Shown here piece by piece: positions 39,741 to 43,808 of a stretch of DNA of 64,000 nucleotides. Under the pieces are notes generated by a model. That model saw only the letters and a list, made by a program, of their open reading frames with translations. It was not told the origin of the DNA and did no database searches. Numbering within the stretch: the first letter of the stretch is position 1; each line of letters starts with the position of its first letter. The position numbers and the translations under genes were made by a program. This stretch comes from Obrimoposthia wandeli (lineage: Eukaryota), in NCBI GenBank assembly GCA_977020255.1, contig CDROCS010000253.1, positions 434,001-498,000 of the forward strand. Reading direction: 5' to 3'.

Positions 39741-40874
39741 TTAAAGTTTAAAGTAATTACAAAAAACCTTATATAACTCAGTTCCCTGATTAACACTCGC
39801 AGAAGCGAAGTGCAAAATAGGAATAACCTCTTGCTCAAGTGACACATAATGCAACGCCTCACCATCACCGTAATTATCCATACGAAGGATTCGAGCTAAC
39901 GGCTCTCCGGCTGCTAAAGGCTTACCGAATTCCCCAAGGTAATCAACCATGCCACCCATCGGTGAATATAAGGCTTTATAATCCTTCAAGTAACAAGCGT
40001 ATCGGGTCATTTTCTGAGGCTGATACTGTTTATTATCGATAACACCCTGAGCGTGTAAATAAGACAAAATACCCAGTGCATCTTGCTTAGCTACCTCTAG
40101 GTCAATTTGTTCTTGGGAGCCAAGCTCAACGGTAAAGCTCTCTTTCTTAAAAGCGCCTTTACCCATAGTAAAGTTTCGACCTAAGTCTTGATAGGCTTCT
40201 TGCAAGCTCCACCATGGACAAAAGGTTGCTTCATCCATGGCGCCATCAAAGCCATTCTGAATAAAGATGGTATGCTCAATATCAAAAAACTCCGCGCTGG
40301 CTTTGGCATACTCAGGACAATATAAGTGCTTACTTGAAATAGGACCTGTGTGTAAGTCCAAAACTATATCAGCCTGATATGCTAGACGTTGTAACTGGTA
40401 GGCAATACGTTGCCCCGTAGTGATCCCCCAAATATTGTGTTCTAATCGTTGATCTATTTCAGTAATCAAAAGTTGCTGGAATTTATCTGCTATTTCTTCT
40501 TCACTCGCATCAAGGTATTGCTGAGCAAAAGGCCCAATAACACTTTGGTCAAAGTGATACATTCGATTCCAGTTTTCCCCAGTAATGGGGTCAAATCGTC
40601 CTAAAGTATACTCACCATTTTTATGATTACAGGCTACCGGATTAGCATACGGCACTAAGGTAATATTGCCTTGTAAATTACAATGCTGTAGCAATTCAAG
40701 CAGCTGAAAAATAACCGCGTTACCTTGTACTTCAGCGCCATGCATATTGGCCTGAATATAAACATTGGGACCAGAATTACTTTCAGATTTAAAGGCATAC
40801 ACCGGCACAGTTAACTTAGCACCACTCGCCATTTCGCCAACTGACATAACTTCTTTGGTAAAACTATTCATCAC
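39741..40874 (-). CDS. M14 / AstE-AspA-family zinc desuccinylase/deacylase
   Basis: HGAE (HxxE), ENWNR, VLDLHTG; biotinyl-like C-terminal domain. Confidence 0.85.
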   Translation of the reverse strand: MMNSFTKEVMSVGEMASGAKLTVPVYAFKSESNSGPNVYIQANMHGAEVQGNAVIFQLLELLQHCNLQGNITLVPYANPVACNHKNGEYTLGRFDPITGENWNRMYHFDQSVIGPFAQQYLDASEEEIADKFQQLLITEIDQRLEHNIWGITTGQRIAYQLQRLAYQADIVLDLHTGPISSKHLYCPEYAKASAEFFDIEHTIFIQNGFDGAMDEATFCPWWSLQEAYQDLGRNFTMGKGAFKKESFTVELGSQEQIDLEVAKQDALGILSYLHAQGVIDNKQYQPQKMTRYACYLKDYKALYSPMGGMVDYLGEFGKPLAAGEPLARILRMDNYGDGEALHYVSLEQEVIPILHFASASVNQGTELYKVFCNYFKL

Positions 40875-40897
40875 AACTCCTCACTCCTAAACATAAG

Positions 40898-42148
40898 CTA
40901 AGCCAAATAAGATGAAGCAGGCTGAGCTGCTCTGATTTGAGTTAGCGTACCATTTTGGTAAACATATTCAGCCGCTAATTCATGACATAAGAAAAACGGC
41001 ATGCTTTCAGTAAAGCCATAAGCGCCGCAATAACCAAACACTAATTGTTCACCAACAGCAGTGTCTTTAGGTAACTGTAAATGCCCTAACTTATCCATAC
41101 TAGTGCATAAAGGGCCATGAATATCAAAAGCTTGCATAGAGTCTTTTTCAGCTATAAACCCTTCTCGTAGTATCTGTACCGGAAAAGGTTGTTCGGTTAT
41201 CGCTGGGCGTAATAAGTGATTGATACCCGCTGCCAAAACTAGCTGTTCTTGGCCATAATTCATTTTTCTATCAACGACAGGTACGACATAATAGCCATAC
41301 TCTGCAACCGCAAAACGTCCTAATTCAAGCCATAATTCTTTGACACCAGCTTTTTCTTTGATAATGGCCAAGTCTTCGATAACTTGAGACCAAGACAATA
41401 CTTGTCCTTCACCTAAGTAATCAATACCTAAACCACCGCCTAAATCGAGTACATCAAGTGTCATACCAATGCTTTTAGCTAAATTGGTCAAGGGCGTTAT
41501 CATTTGAGACCATAATGAAAACATTTTTTCATTACTGAGCATGTTGCCCCATTGAAAAATATGCAAGCCACAAAGATCCAACGCTGGATAGTCATCTACG
41601 TGGATATTTTGCCACTCAGACACTGATAAACCAAAAGGCGTTAAGCTATTGCCACCCAGTGGATTTTTCTCGCCTTCATGCCATTGCAGCTGAACTCTTA
41701 GAAGTACTTTCGGTCTGGCATTGCTACAGGAAGATTGTTCCTGCTCAAGAACCGCTTCATTTAACCAGTTCAGTTGATTTAAACTCTCAACCACAAAAGT
41801 ATTAACGCCCAGCTTAACAAATGCAGTAAGCTGTTTTTTTGATTTAGCGGGTCCAGTATTTAATACTCGACTGGGATCGATACCTTGCGCTAAAACTTGA
41901 GCTAATTCACCACTACTAGCAACATCAAAGTTAAAACCTTCACTATCTAATGTTTGAATTACTTTTGATAATGGATTCGCTTTAACAGCAAACCATAATT
42001 TAATGACGTCTTGCTGCTGCAAAGCGGCTAAATGTACTTTAAGTGCATCGAGTTGATAAACAAAATAGCCTTGTTCATCTTCTGGTGATTCATGGGTAAC
42101 TAAGGCATTTTCAATACTGGTGTCAAACCAAGTGGATTTAGTCATCAT
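40898..42148 (-). CDS. PLP fold-III amino-acid decarboxylase, divergent LysA-like
   Basis: FAVKANP, DLGGGLG, ELGRF, GPLC, GAYG. It has HIFQWGN where canonical LysA has HIGSQ. Confidence 0.85.
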   Translation of the reverse strand: MMTKSTWFDTSIENALVTHESPEDEQGYFVYQLDALKVHLAALQQQDVIKLWFAVKANPLSKVIQTLDSEGFNFDVASSGELAQVLAQGIDPSRVLNTGPAKSKKQLTAFVKLGVNTFVVESLNQLNWLNEAVLEQEQSSCSNARPKVLLRVQLQWHEGEKNPLGGNSLTPFGLSVSEWQNIHVDDYPALDLCGLHIFQWGNMLSNEKMFSLWSQMITPLTNLAKSIGMTLDVLDLGGGLGIDYLGEGQVLSWSQVIEDLAIIKEKAGVKELWLELGRFAVAEYGYYVVPVVDRKMNYGQEQLVLAAGINHLLRPAITEQPFPVQILREGFIAEKDSMQAFDIHGPLCTSMDKLGHLQLPKDTAVGEQLVFGYCGAYGFTESMPFFLCHELAAEYVYQNGTLTQIRAAQPASSYLA

Positions 42149-42303
42149 AATTTTCTTTAATCTTAATAACTCAATCGAGTTAGTGAATTAGTTATTCAGC
42201 TTTAAGTTGTATGATTCAAGCTAAAGAAAAAAGCACGGAGTTGATGAATATCAATGAGTACTTTTGACGCATAGATTGGACCATACAGCGACAAGATGAT
42301 TAA

Positions 42304-43053
42304 TTAACGTAGAATTGATTCTAGTTCTAGTGAAGCATCGCTTTGTTCATCGCGATATTTAACGATAAGCGCACATGCCATACTTAGACCTTGCTCTTGA
42401 GCCCATTCACCTTTTACAGGACGGGTACCAGGTACAACAACTGCACGTTCTGGAATTTCAGCACCTTTTTCTCGCATAACTTGATTAACACAATCATAAA
42501 CAGGTACTGATTTTGAAAGAGATACGCCTGGTGCTAATACCGCACCTTTTTTAACAACAATGCCTTCAACTACAACGACACCAGCACTTAAAAAGGCACC
42601 ATCTTCAATGATTACAGGACTAGCGCCTATTGGCTCTAATACGCCACCAATTTGAACGGCTGCTGAAATATGTACATTTTTACCAACTTGTGCACATGAA
42701 CCAATCAAGGCATGGCTATCAACCATAGTGCCACTATCAACAAAAGCGCCAACATTGATATAAGCTGGTGGCATGATGATAACACCTTCAGCGACGTAAG
42801 CACCTGCGCGTACTGATGAACCACCAGGTACTAAACGAACACCATCTTTTGGTGTAAATTGACGAGCTGGTAAGTTGTGTTTATCAACAAAACCTTGGTA
42901 ATTATCATCAAAAGCAACGTTTTTACCTGCTTTAAATGCAGCTAAAATACCTTGTTTCACTTCAATGTTGGCATGCCAGTTACCGGCATCATCTTGGTTT
43001 GCCGCTCGTAAACTACCTGATTCTAACTGTGCTAATACATCTTGCCAGTCCAT
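42304..43053 (-). CDS. dapD: Tetrahydrodipicolinate N-succinyltransferase, short form
   Basis: RLVPGGSSVR, MPPAYINVGAFVD, GSCAQVGKNVHIS, GGVLEP hexapeptide repeats. Confidence 0.88.
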   Translation of the reverse strand: MDWQDVLAQLESGSLRAANQDDAGNWHANIEVKQGILAAFKAGKNVAFDDNYQGFVDKHNLPARQFTPKDGVRLVPGGSSVRAGAYVAEGVIIMPPAYINVGAFVDSGTMVDSHALIGSCAQVGKNVHISAAVQIGGVLEPIGASPVIIEDGAFLSAGVVVVEGIVVKKGAVLAPGVSLSKSVPVYDCVNQVMREKGAEIPERAVVVPGTRPVKGEWAQEQGLSMACALIVKYRDEQSDASLELESILR

Positions 43054-43229
43054 TTATTACTCCGCTTATCTGATAAAAAGTTTATAGAAAAATAATGAGT
43101 ACCCGTGTTATTAAAGGTATGCATAAACACACTTGATTAATAAAACTAAATACATTGCGCGGAGGACTGGGCATTGACAGAGAAGAGCATAATATCAGCT
43201 GAGCTGGTATTTGGGCTAATATGCAAAGA

Positions 43230-43640
43230 CCAGAAGCTCCCCACTTAATACCCGTTCCACTTGAAGATGCATGATTCAGCTGGAATTAGAAATGCCTTTA
43301 GGCAAGGCATTGATTGAAGAGAATAGTTATTCTATTGTCTAAATCAATAACGCAGTATAAAGCGTTTCTAAACCAGTTGTTGGTTACATTTCTTAGGGAA
43401 TGACCCTTAATAAAAAATGTGCCTTGATTATGAATCGCTCAGACTTCCTGACGAGCATTTCAAGTGATAAAATATAAAGTGACAAGTATTCAGCCCACAA
43501 CCGATAAACAGCTAATCAAATAGTCATTTATCTCGGCGTTAATCCCCCTCATTACTATCTACAGATTTTGATATCTGTTTTTGAATTGTTCAAGACAATA
43601 CAAAACAATAGTAATTACCTGGTTAACGCTCCTCTTCTGG
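43230..43640 (-). ncRNA. Lysine riboswitch, interrupted by a 230-nt insertion
   Basis: The 5' end is CCAGAAGAGGAGCGUUAACCAGGUA. P1 CCAGAAG (43640-34) pairs with CUUCUGG (43236-30). P2 attactat/atagtaat and P3 are present, the loops AUCAAA/UUUGAU are complementary, and the 3' end is AAGUGGGGAGCUUCUGG. It lies upstream of dap/lys genes. Confidence 0.85.
43247..43476. mobile_element. ERIC-like MITE, decayed copy 2 (inverted relative to copy 1)
   Basis: 43263-43376 aligns ungapped to the reverse complement of copy 1, with 8 mismatches in 114 nt (manual count). The rest matches the other module, with a 35-40 nt internal loss and eroded TIRs. Confidence 0.9.
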
Positions 43641-43808
43641 CCCTATTAAAATTTACTGGTAAGTTACTCAACCGGTAAATTGAAATTAGGGACTCTACTA
43701 TTTAAGCATTTTTTTTACCTAGGTACAATTAACTTCCGGCAAATAACCCTATTCCCTTATAACTATTTACCGTAGAATATAACCATAATTTTTATCATTT
43801 ATTGCCCT

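What the first reader, a model, noticed from the sequence alone, without database searches (positions are those of the whole stretch)
43230..43640. MITE inserted exactly in the P5 loop of the lysine riboswitch
Seen: on the minus strand the aptamer runs normally to UCACUU (43482-77), is interrupted by the 230-nt ERIC-like copy, and resumes at AAGUGG-GGAGCUUCUGG (43246-30). UCACUU and AAGUGG are the two P5 strands. The element's ends still pair (CACUUGAA..AUGC with GCAU..UUCAAGUG, plus G-U pairs further out), so it can fold out as a self-contained extension of P5. Inference: this could be a tolerated or exapted insertion that preserves the ligand core, changes folding kinetics or adds an RNase site. 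A ~410-nt aptamer would probably be missed by standard covariance searches.
Basis: partly seen in the sequence, partly recalled or inferred. Interest (0 to 1): 0.8.

Follow-up and report, generated by a model that had tools for sequence, protein, structure and literature searches.

The report
Transposon-disrupted lysine riboswitch in Colwellia
A small mobile repeat really does sit between the two P5 strands of a lysine-sensing RNA switch in a Colwellia-like bacterium, but this copy of the switch has also lost its P4 arm, so it is more likely a broken, lysine-blind switch than a cleverly tolerated one. Three related species carry the same repeat in another loop of an otherwise intact switch.

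Summary
On the minus strand, an RF00168 lysine riboswitch (49.1 bits) sits 177 nt upstream of a dapD-like gene. A 219-nt copy (43466-43248) of a TA-flanked, TIR-bearing MITE lies between the P5 strands UCACUU (43482-77) and AAGUGG (43246-41). The true P1 3' strand follows at 43236-27. The family has at least 70 copies here and occurs across the genus. It is not ERIC.

The aptamer does not "run normally" up to the insertion. I compared 17 MITE-free congeners, three of them about 95% identical in the adjacent leader and gene. Against these, the window lacks the P4a side hairpin, the 3' strand of P4 (CCCAACA) and the whole distal P5 hairpin. It differs at 26 of 149 genus-invariant columns, all in P4. 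The MITE copy is 5'-truncated, internally deleted and has no target duplication.

Published B. subtilis mutants show that cutting P4 to 4 bp abolishes the lysine response. I therefore read this as a recently disabled switch upstream of a still-constrained operon.

Three other species carry the same MITE, in the same orientation, in the P4a loop of an intact aptamer. That is where "tolerated insertion" holds.

Caveat: public contigs from the best-matching sample do not show the window's junction.

The parts
43227..43644 (-). Whole interrupted lysine riboswitch aptamer, from the P1 5' strand to the true P1 3' strand
   Evidence: Rfam RF00168 49.1 bits over 43644-43443. The true 3' end was set by homology to relatives and by the MFE fold.
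43634..43643 (-). P1 5' strand GGGCCAGAAG
   Evidence: Pairs with 43236-43227 in the fold. The same 10 pairs are invariant or G-U/G-C in 17 relatives.
43503..43633 (-). J1/2, P2 (with a long lineage-specific loop) and P3. All genus-invariant positions are kept. One new A.C mismatch in P3 (AAAUGACU against AAAUGGCU).
   Evidence: Alignments and invariant-column count.
43484..43502 (-). P4 remnant GGUUGUGGGCUGAAUACUU. The 5' strand and the CUGAAU loop are present. The P4a hairpin (about 26 nt) and the 3' strand CCCAACA are deleted. Only about 3 pairs (GGU/ACU) are possible.
   Evidence: Comparison with L121-L139. RNAalifold P4 pairs are invariant in 17 relatives.
43477..43482 (-). P5 5' strand UCACUU
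   Evidence: Homologous to alignment columns 216-221, invariant in relatives. Pairs with 43246-41.
43467..43476 (-). 10 nt UAUAUUUUAU of unclear origin. They stand where the MITE's 5' terminus TACCCGCTC should be, and pair by A-U and G.U with the element's 3' terminus GGGUAU.
   Evidence: Flank comparison of 28 copies; folds.
43248..43466 (-). MITE copy of 219 nt. It is 5'-truncated and 36-84 nt shorter inside than other copies (254-256 or 300-303 nt). No TSD. It replaces the distal P5 hairpin of relatives.
   Evidence: 58 BLAST matches in G000, a lower bound. Boundaries are shared by all copies. The 19-nt end motif gives 137 hits against 0 in the control.
43349..43366 (-). Weak terminator-like hairpin inside the MITE, in the sense of the leader (AACGC-loop-GCGUU then AUUGAUUUAG)
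   Evidence: Consensus scan: 1 found against 0.4 expected. Weak and not tested.
43241..43246 (-). P5 3' strand AAGUGG
   Evidence: Identical to relatives; pairs in the fold.
43227..43236 (-). True P1 3' strand CUUCUGGUCU, preceded by J5/1 GGAG (43240-37)
   Evidence: The Rfam alignment instead used MITE letters at 43460-43443.
43159..43171 (-). Conserved anti-SD element CCCAGUCCUCCGC of the expression platform
   Evidence: Leader alignment of 21 loci. Pairs with the SD and codons 2-3 in single-sequence folds. L129 carries a compensatory change.
43045..43065 (-). SD GCGGAG (43065-60), start codon AUG (43053-51) and GGACUGG, the partner of the anti-SD element
42304..43053 (-). dapD-like tetrahydrodipicolinate N-succinyltransferase-type gene (249 aa), the first gene of the regulated operon. 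It is intact.
   Evidence: Pfam Hexapep plus THDPS_N_2. 92-93% identical to Colwellia proteins. dN/dS 0.03-0.08.

Best explanation
This is the 5' leader of a dapD-like / PLP-decarboxylase / AstE-type desuccinylase operon in a Colwellia-like bacterium. The bacterium is a 4.68-Mb contig inside a 1.35-Gb multi-organism assembly.

In the genus, the leader is a lysine riboswitch with two parts:
- an aptamer with P1-P5 plus a lineage-specific P4a branch;
- a translational expression platform, in which CCCAGUCCUCCGC can sequester the SD and the first codons.

In this genome the aptamer has been structurally disabled:
- A decayed copy of a genus-wide TA-targeting MITE has replaced the distal P5 hairpin.
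- Separate deletions removed P4a and the 3' strand of P4.

The RNA should still form P1, P2, P3 and a very long, very stable P5. It cannot build the P4 stem-loop whose L4 docks on P2 and organises the lysine pocket. It has therefore most likely lost its lysine response.

What is shown: the insertion, the deletions, and the conservation of what was lost. What is inferred: the loss of ligand response. The direction of the resulting constitutive state (on or off) is not determined. Because the downstream gene remains under purifying selection and the rest of the aptamer has few changes, the damage is probably recent.
For: Rfam scores:
- The window scores 49.1 bits. MITE-free aptamers at the same locus score 64-79 bits.
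- Other relatives of the first scan score 59-110 bits.

Empty sites:
- They occur in 16 same-genus loci.
- They also occur in contigs of three isolate-like runs about 96% identical to the window. These have 74 letters where the window has 247.

What was lost:
- The window differs at 26 of 149 columns that are invariant in 17 relatives. All 26 are in P4/P4a. The nearest relatives differ at 0-2.
- P4 proximal, P4 distal and the loop are invariant. P4a and distal P5 covary.

State of the MITE copy:
- It lacks the canonical 5' terminus that all 27 other copies inspected carry. It has no TA duplication and is 36-84 nt shorter.

Experimental precedent (PMC3082890):
- P4 reduced to 4 bp completely disrupts lysine-mediated control.
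- P5 lengthened to 16 bp raises the off state with or without lysine.

Signs of recent, local damage:
- There is one new A.C mismatch in P3.
- The leader and SD/anti-SD elements are conserved.
Against: - P1, P2, P3, all junction letters and proximal P5 are intact, and the MFE fold keeps the overall architecture. A weakened response cannot be excluded.
- dapD-like dN/dS is as low as in relatives. The 178-nt 5' part of the aptamer has only 3 derived changes. This could mean continued function rather than recency.
- The P4 evidence comes from a transcriptional riboswitch of a distant species.
- The allele itself is unconfirmed. The X1 contig reaching the junction departs from the window at 43496/97, no run holds the junction words, and two exact scans of metagenome contigs found nothing.
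Confidence: 0.55

Rival explanations
1. Tolerated or exapted insertion. The MITE folds out of P5 as a self-contained hairpin, the aptamer still binds lysine, and regulation persists, perhaps with altered kinetics or stability.
For: - The MITE ends pair and extend P5.
- P5 is the least conserved helix, and only its junction-proximal pairs matter (PMC3082890).
- The same MITE is evidently tolerated in the P4a loop of intact aptamers in three species. One insertion was retained through a speciation.
- The operon is intact and constrained.
- Few substitutions have occurred in P1-P3.
Against: - P4 is truncated to about 3 bp, with loss of about 20 genus-invariant positions.
- A P4 shortened to 4 bp is inactive in B. 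subtilis.
- Distal P5, which covaries in relatives, is also gone.
- The element is a decayed fragment without a TSD, which is what relaxed constraint would produce.
Confidence: 0.15
2. The assembled allele does not represent the organism. It is a local assembly error or a minority variant, and the dominant sequence is an intact aptamer like those of L121-L123.
For: - In the best-holding run X1 (flanks 100% identical, depth about 43), nothing covers 43473-43496.
- X1 record 6 (252 nt) aligns only to 43497-43646. Its other 102 letters lie off the window. The break is where MITE-free relatives diverge.
- No run holds any of the 5 sampled junction words, although X1 holds 85% of the words of the wider stretch.
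- Exact scans for both junction signatures in metagenome contigs gave 0 hits.
Against: - The locus lies on a single 4.68-Mb contig and occurs once in the assembly.
- The inserted DNA is a bona fide family member with sharp boundaries and copy-specific indels, which assemblers do not invent.
- Logan contigs drop or break sequence next to high-copy repeats, and the tool itself warns that a hole proves nothing.
- X1 contains a second, minor strain that complicates the graph.
Confidence: 0.2
3. Gain of a new regulatory function. The MITE supplies a terminator, a promoter or an RNase site, or its hyper-stable P5 clamps P1/P5, so the leader becomes a lysine-independent attenuator with a newly set expression level.
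For: - A weak terminator-like hairpin lies in the sense orientation inside the MITE.
- Lengthening P5 drives the off state independently of lysine in B. subtilis.
- All aptamer-borne copies share one orientation relative to transcription.
Against: - The terminator candidate is marginal (5 bp, 3 G-C pairs).
- Promoter-like sites do not exceed chance (3 found, 3.6 expected).
- Orientation agreement in 2-3 events is not significant.
- Thermodynamic modelling of on and off states was inconclusive.
- No RNA data are available.
Confidence: 0.1

Closest known systems
Lysine riboswitch (L box, Rfam RF00168), e.g. B. subtilis lysC, T. maritima asd, E. coli lysC
   Same: It passes the Rfam gathering score. 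It has the five-way-junction layout with the conserved junction letters GAGGAGCG, GCCGAG, CGG and GUGGGGAGCU. It lies upstream of a lysine-pathway operon. In relatives it appears to work by SD sequestration; that E. coli lysC works this way is from my own knowledge.
   Different: P4 is truncated to about 3 bp and the P4a branch is lost. P5 carries a 219-nt mobile element. The aptamer is 418 nt long, against about 246 in sister species and 182 model positions.
Engineered P4 and P5 length mutants of B. subtilis lysC (Blouin, Chinnappan and Lafontaine 2011, PMC3082890)
   Same: The window combines, in nature, the two perturbations tested there: a shortened P4 and a greatly lengthened, stabilised P5.
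   Different: Those were transcriptional riboswitch constructs with a few base pairs changed. Here a whole transposon is inserted, in a probably translational riboswitch of a gammaproteobacterium. Nothing has been measured.
BOX element between the two T-box riboswitches upstream of the S. pneumoniae trp operon (Croucher et al. 2011, PMC3049150)
   Same: A small non-autonomous repeat is co-transcribed within a riboswitch-bearing 5' leader. There, regulation seems to be retained.
   Different: BOX lies between two complete riboswitches, not inside an aptamer helix. No aptamer element is lost there.
Bacterial TA-flanked TIR MITEs (own knowledge: Correia elements, RUP, IS630/Tc1-mariner-derived MITEs)
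   Same: About 250-300 nt long, with TIRs of about 24 nt, TA on both flanks, tens of copies, mostly intergenic, and folding into a long hairpin when transcribed.
   Different: The sequence is specific to Colwellia. No autonomous partner was identified here. It is unrelated to ERIC by sequence.

Membership tests
Lysine riboswitch RF00168 | Covariance-model score at or above the curated gathering score | tested here: met
   49.1 bits against 30, with the full model 1-182 aligned, but the 3' third is aligned to the wrong letters.
Lysine riboswitch RF00168 | P1 closing helix and conserved five-way-junction nucleotides | tested here: met
   P1 of 10 pairs, 43643-34 with 43236-27. Junction letters are identical to 17 relatives, except for an extra U before GUCAC.
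Lysine riboswitch RF00168 | P2 and P3 with the elements for the L2-L3 contact | tested here: inconclusive
   All genus-invariant positions are kept. One new A.C mismatch in P3. The tertiary contact cannot be tested in silico.
Lysine riboswitch RF00168 | P4 stem-loop of defined length presenting L4 to P2 | tested here: not met
   The 3' strand CCCAACA and P4a are absent, and about 3 bp are possible. The importance of this feature comes from PMC3082890.
Lysine riboswitch RF00168 | P5 with conserved junction-proximal pairs | tested here: met
   UCACUU/AAGUGG are retained. The distal part is replaced by the MITE.
Lysine riboswitch RF00168 | Binds L-lysine and changes gene expression | not testable with these tools
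   Needs probing, binding and reporter assays.
Lysine riboswitch RF00168 | Lies in the 5' leader of a lysine biosynthesis or transport gene | tested here: met
   177 nt upstream of a dapD-like gene, followed by genes for an Orn/DAP-decarboxylase-family protein and an AstE/AspA-family protein.
MITE (non-autonomous TIR element) | Many dispersed copies with shared boundaries | tested here: met
   58 or more matches in G000. Boundaries are identical in 27 copies. The end motif gives 137 hits against 0 in the control. The family is present in 4 of 5 other Colwellia genomes in dozens of copies.
MITE (non-autonomous TIR element) | Terminal inverted repeats | tested here: inconclusive
   The family has TACCCGCTCCACTTGAAGATGC / GCATCTTCAAGTGGAACGGGTA. 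This copy keeps the 3' TIR and only the inner 12 nt of the 5' TIR.
MITE (non-autonomous TIR element) | Target-site duplication | tested here: not met
   The family has TA on both sides. This copy has none recognisable...UUUAU|CACUUG and GGGUA|UUAAGUG.
MITE (non-autonomous TIR element) | Small size, no coding capacity, and an autonomous partner with the same ends | not tested
   At 219 nt it has no ORF of 50 aa or more. No partner transposase was looked for.
ERIC (enterobacterial repetitive intergenic consensus) | Sequence similarity to the ERIC consensus carried by E. coli genomes | tested here: not met
   blastn (word 11) of the element against 5,426 E. coli genomes gave no match.

The most novel reading that the evidence does not exclude
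MITE entry into peripheral loops of this lysine riboswitch is recurrent in Colwellia and selectively tolerated, or even used. There are two or three independent entries at the dapD-type locus, in the P5 and P4a loops. A MITE remnant also sits in the P3 extension of the genus's second lysine riboswitch in one species. Under this reading the transposon hairpins act as natural tuning modules that change helix stability and folding timing. In the window, the hyper-stable MITE-extended P5 would have converted a ligand-gated switch into a fixed-output leader, after which P4 became dispensable.
Probability: 0.12. Interest if true: 0.7.

Novelty: new variant of a known kind. Interest (0 to 1): 0.45.

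Why it matters
Riboswitch aptamers are usually treated as compact, indel-intolerant folds.

These Colwellia genomes offer a natural series at one orthologous locus:
- intact aptamers;
- aptamers carrying a 210-255-nt transposon in a peripheral loop with every conserved element preserved;
- one aptamer (this window) where an insertion goes together with loss of P4.

The series could be used to ask how much extra RNA a translational riboswitch tolerates between the strands of a helix, and how riboswitches die.

It also has a practical side. Covariance searches still find such loci but mis-place their 3' ends, so annotation pipelines will under-call the true aptamer span.

For this window alone the result is more ordinary: a mobile-element-associated, probably disabling lesion in a known regulator.

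Tried and rejected
- **Rfam model on a MITE-spliced sequence.** This was not possible, because the tools take only stored loci. I used natural empty sites instead.
- **ERIC identity.** Rejected.
- **MITE originally in the P4a loop, as in G024/G041/G050, then rearranged.** I considered this because the 5' flank TTGTCACTTTATATTTTAT resembles P4/P4a TTGTGTACTTTATATATTTTAT. I rejected it as less parsimonious, because TGGGCTGAAT lies upstream of that flank in the window. It is not excluded.
- **The 10 nt at 43476-67 as a mutated MITE terminus (CCC to TTT and so on).** This would need 5 substitutions plus 1 deletion in 10 nt next to a 93%-identical stretch, which is unlikely. It is left open.
- **Thermodynamic comparison of P1-forced and anti-sequester-forced states** in the window and 10 relatives. 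The SD was paired in nearly all states, so there is no usable contrast.
- **Independent confirmation of the allele.** All of these drew blanks: a second run search on the junction, two exact metagenome scans, and exact-protein look-ups for both neighbouring genes.
- **Other copies of the locus in the assembly.** None.
- **Promoter-like sites in the region.** Not above chance.
- **Literature search for a MITE inside a riboswitch aptamer.** No case was found in the held library.

Full report
**What is there**

Rfam's gathering-threshold scan of the whole window gives a single hit: RF00168 Lysine, 43644..43443 on the minus strand, 49.1 bits. A permissive scan of 43150-43700 adds nothing.

Downstream on the same strand lie three genes:
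- a 249-aa dapD-like gene (43053..42304; Hexapep plus THDPS_N_2);
- a 416-aa Orn/DAP/Arg-decarboxylase-family gene;
- a 377-aa AstE/AspA-family gene.

The window is part of a 4.68-Mb contig (C253) of a 1.35-Gb, 6912-contig assembly that holds several bacteria. The dapD-like protein is 92-93% identical to those of Colwellia asteriadis and other Colwelliaceae.

**The repeat**

A search of the assembly with 43485-43240 gave 58 matches, which is a lower bound. All share the same limits, window 43466..43248, a length of 219 nt.

Twenty-seven other copies, inspected with their flanks, are 239-256 or 300-303 nt long (most are 253-256 or 302-303). They all read TA|TACCCGCTCCACTTGAAGATGC ... GCATCTTCAAGTGGAACGGGTA|TA. 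That is a TIR of about 24 nt with TA on both sides. The 19-nt end motif occurs 137 times, against 0 for the reversed control.

The family is present in dozens of copies in four of five other Colwellia genomes tested. It has no match in E. coli genomes and no Rfam family. So it is a genus-wide MITE, not ERIC.

The window copy is aberrant:
- The terminal TACCCGCTC of its 5' end is missing. UAUAUUUUAU stands in its place.
- It is 36-84 nt shorter internally.
- No TA duplication can be recognised.
- Its 3' half is 97-98% identical to the 303-nt subfamily, and its first 72 nt are 93% identical.

**Position in the aptamer**

The letters before the element include UCACUU (43482-77). The letters after it are UAAGUGGGGAGCUUCUGGUCUU (43247-43226). 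The latter are identical to the P5 3' strand, J5/1 and P1 3' strand of relatives.

The MFE fold of the 426-nt stretch forms P1, P2, P3 and a P5 prolonged by the MITE hairpin (-125.4 kcal/mol, z -6.2).

Rfam's own alignment uses MITE letters (CACUUGAAAUGCU..UCAGG) as a poor substitute for the 3' end. This is why its hit stops at 43443. The hit still passes the threshold, so the prediction that such an aptamer would be missed is wrong.

**Empty sites and what else changed**

A search of the 55 genomes of the same genus found the locus in 54. For the 20 closest, the DNA was fetched. Nineteen have RF00168 directly upstream of the leader.

Sixteen have an aptamer of 234-266 nt with no MITE, scoring 64-79 bits. 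Three of them (G014, G007, G016) are 95% identical to the window in the adjacent leader and gene.

Contigs of three isolate-like public runs, about 96% identical to the window, bridge 43248 and 43496 with 74 letters where the window has 247.

In these relatives the sequence reads: CGGTTGTG | TACTTTATATATTTTATAAAGTAG (a P4a side hairpin) | TGGGCTGAAT | CCCAACAACT | GTCACTTT | GAAAAACAACCCTATGGGTTGTT (distal P5) | TAAGTGGGG.

The window reads: CGGTTG | TGGGCTGAAT | ACTT | GTCACTTT | ATATTTTAT | MITE | TAAGTGGGG.

So besides gaining the MITE, the window has lost P4a (about 26 nt), the P4 3' strand (CCCAACA) and all of distal P5 (23 nt).

RNAalifold on 17 MITE-free relatives shows the following:
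- P4 proximal (6 bp), P4 distal (UGGG/CCCA) and its CUGAAU loop are invariant.
- P4a and distal P5 are helices with compensatory changes.

The window differs at 26 of the 149 columns invariant in those 17 sequences. All 26 lie in P4/P4a. Its nearest relatives differ at 0-2. Outside P4 it keeps every invariant column, and it has one new A.C mismatch in P3.

**Functional reading**

The B. subtilis lysC riboswitch has been tested directly (PMC3082890):
- The P2-L4 contact organises the binding pocket.
- Lengthening P5 to 16 bp raised termination with or without lysine.

The window combines a P4 of about 3 bp with an enormously stabilised P5. I therefore infer that the aptamer is lysine-blind or nearly so.

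The expression platform is as conserved as in relatives. The element CCCAGUCCUCCGC (43171-59) pairs with the SD GCGGAG (43065-60) and with GGACUGG after the AUG in single-sequence folds. L129 carries a compensatory change in this pairing. This points to translational control in the genus.

Whether the damaged leader is fixed on or off could not be decided. A two-state thermodynamic comparison was uninformative.

The dapD-like gene has dN/dS of 0.03-0.08, like its relatives, and the 5' 178 nt of the aptamer carry only three derived changes. So either the lesion is recent or some function persists.

The genome's second lysine riboswitch (C253:3901380-3901600) is intact at 85.8 bits.

**The same MITE in intact aptamers of relatives**

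In three loci the two P1 strands lie 428-485 nt apart: L128 (G024), L129 (G041) and L137 (G050). The same MITE family, in the same orientation, sits in the loop of P4a. Every conserved element is retained.

The L129 RNA folds with the MITE as an extension of P4a. Rfam scores these loci at 55.1, 56.8 and 48.8 bits with a misplaced 3' end.

On a tree of 1.9 kb downstream DNA:
- L128 and L129 are sisters (100/100), nested among MITE-free species, so that insertion survived a speciation.
- L137 lies elsewhere.
- The window lies in a 100/100 clade whose other five members are MITE-free.

There were therefore at least two, and probably three, independent entries.

In G031, the other type of lysine riboswitch carries a 43-nt MITE 5' remnant inside an extended P3 and still scores 73.9 bits.

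A rough estimate suggests this frequency is about what neutral landing in tolerant loops would give. It assumes about 100 copies, about 0.5 Mb of intergenic DNA and a 250-nt target in about 20 lineages. So I do not claim targeting.

**Caveat on the allele**

Run X1 holds 85% of the sampled words of 42300-43800 and matches both flanks perfectly at depth about 43. No X1 contig covers 43473-43496. The 252-nt contig that reaches the site from the 5' side aligns only to 43497-43646.

A run search with the 83-nt junction stretch listed no run at all. Exact scans of metagenome contigs for both junction signatures found nothing. Exact-protein look-ups of both neighbouring genes found no other assembly.

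Contigs break at high-copy repeats, X1 also holds a minor second strain, and the tool warns that holes prove nothing. Even so, the allele is unconfirmed and could be polymorphic.

**Comparison with what is known**

The locus is a member of the lysine riboswitch family by score, layout and context, but it fails the P4 criterion.

The nearest published situation found is a BOX element lying between two T-box riboswitches in S. pneumoniae, where regulation seemed to be retained (PMC3049150). Reviews only speculate that MITEs might form riboswitch-like structures (PMC10969869). No report of a MITE inside an aptamer helix turned up in the held library.

**Verdict**

The 'exapted, core-preserving' interpretation is not supported for this window. 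It is supported, as tolerance, for the P4a insertions in three sister species.

Noticed in passing
L128:1079-1522, L129:1022-1522, L137:1023-1522 (genomes G024, G041, G050): The same MITE family, in the same orientation, sits in the loop of the P4a side hairpin of an otherwise fully conserved lysine aptamer. One insertion is shared by two sister species. In L137 the P4a stem around it carries compensatory changes (GUGCU/AGCAC).
   Followed up: partly
L121-L139 aptamers (alignment A2): The dapD-type lysine riboswitch of this genus has an unusual three-way junction in P4 (a 9-bp P4a branch between proximal and distal P4) and a long, variable P2 loop. The segment UGGGCUGAAUCCCAACAACUGUCAC is invariant in 16 of 17 species.
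   Followed up: partly
L152:482-551 (G031:C76, minus strand): In one species, the other type of lysine riboswitch in the genus has a 70-nt insertion in P3 that contains a 43-nt remnant of the same MITE's 5' end. It still scores 73.9 bits.
   Followed up: partly
window 43045-43171 (-) and homologous leaders: A conserved CCCAGUCCUCCGC element can pair with the SD GCGGAG and with GGACUGG just after the start codon. The aptamer's 3' strand GUGGGGAG...CUGG mimics that target. This suggests an E. coli lysC-like translational switch. L129 has a compensatory G-to-A / C-to-U change.
   Followed up: partly
L031:1969-2901 and most loci: In many Colwelliaceae and Thalassotalea, a 310-aa ORF lies between the riboswitch and the dapD-like gene. 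It is absent in the window's clade, in L032 and in L038, where the riboswitch directly precedes dapD-like.
   Followed up: no
window 39741-43053 (-): The riboswitch-controlled operon is dapD-like + Orn/DAP-decarboxylase-family + AstE/AspA-family (M14-like) desuccinylase. This is an unusual gene set for lysine synthesis.
   Followed up: partly
G000 contigs C122, C1101, C506, C1209, C5125, C2834, C3797: Seven further lysine riboswitches (90-133 bits) lie on other contigs of the 1.35-Gb assembly, so it holds several different bacteria besides the Colwellia-like chromosome C253.
   Followed up: no
window 43644-43786, run X1 record 8: The best-matching public sample contains a second, minor strain (depth about 10, about 92% identical). 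It shares its variants with the MITE-free isolates X4, X8 and X12.
   Followed up: no
L035 (Colwellia sp. E2M01, G004): No lysine riboswitch is detectable within 3 kb upstream of its dapD-like gene, although the genome has one elsewhere (96 bits) and many MITE copies.
   Followed up: no
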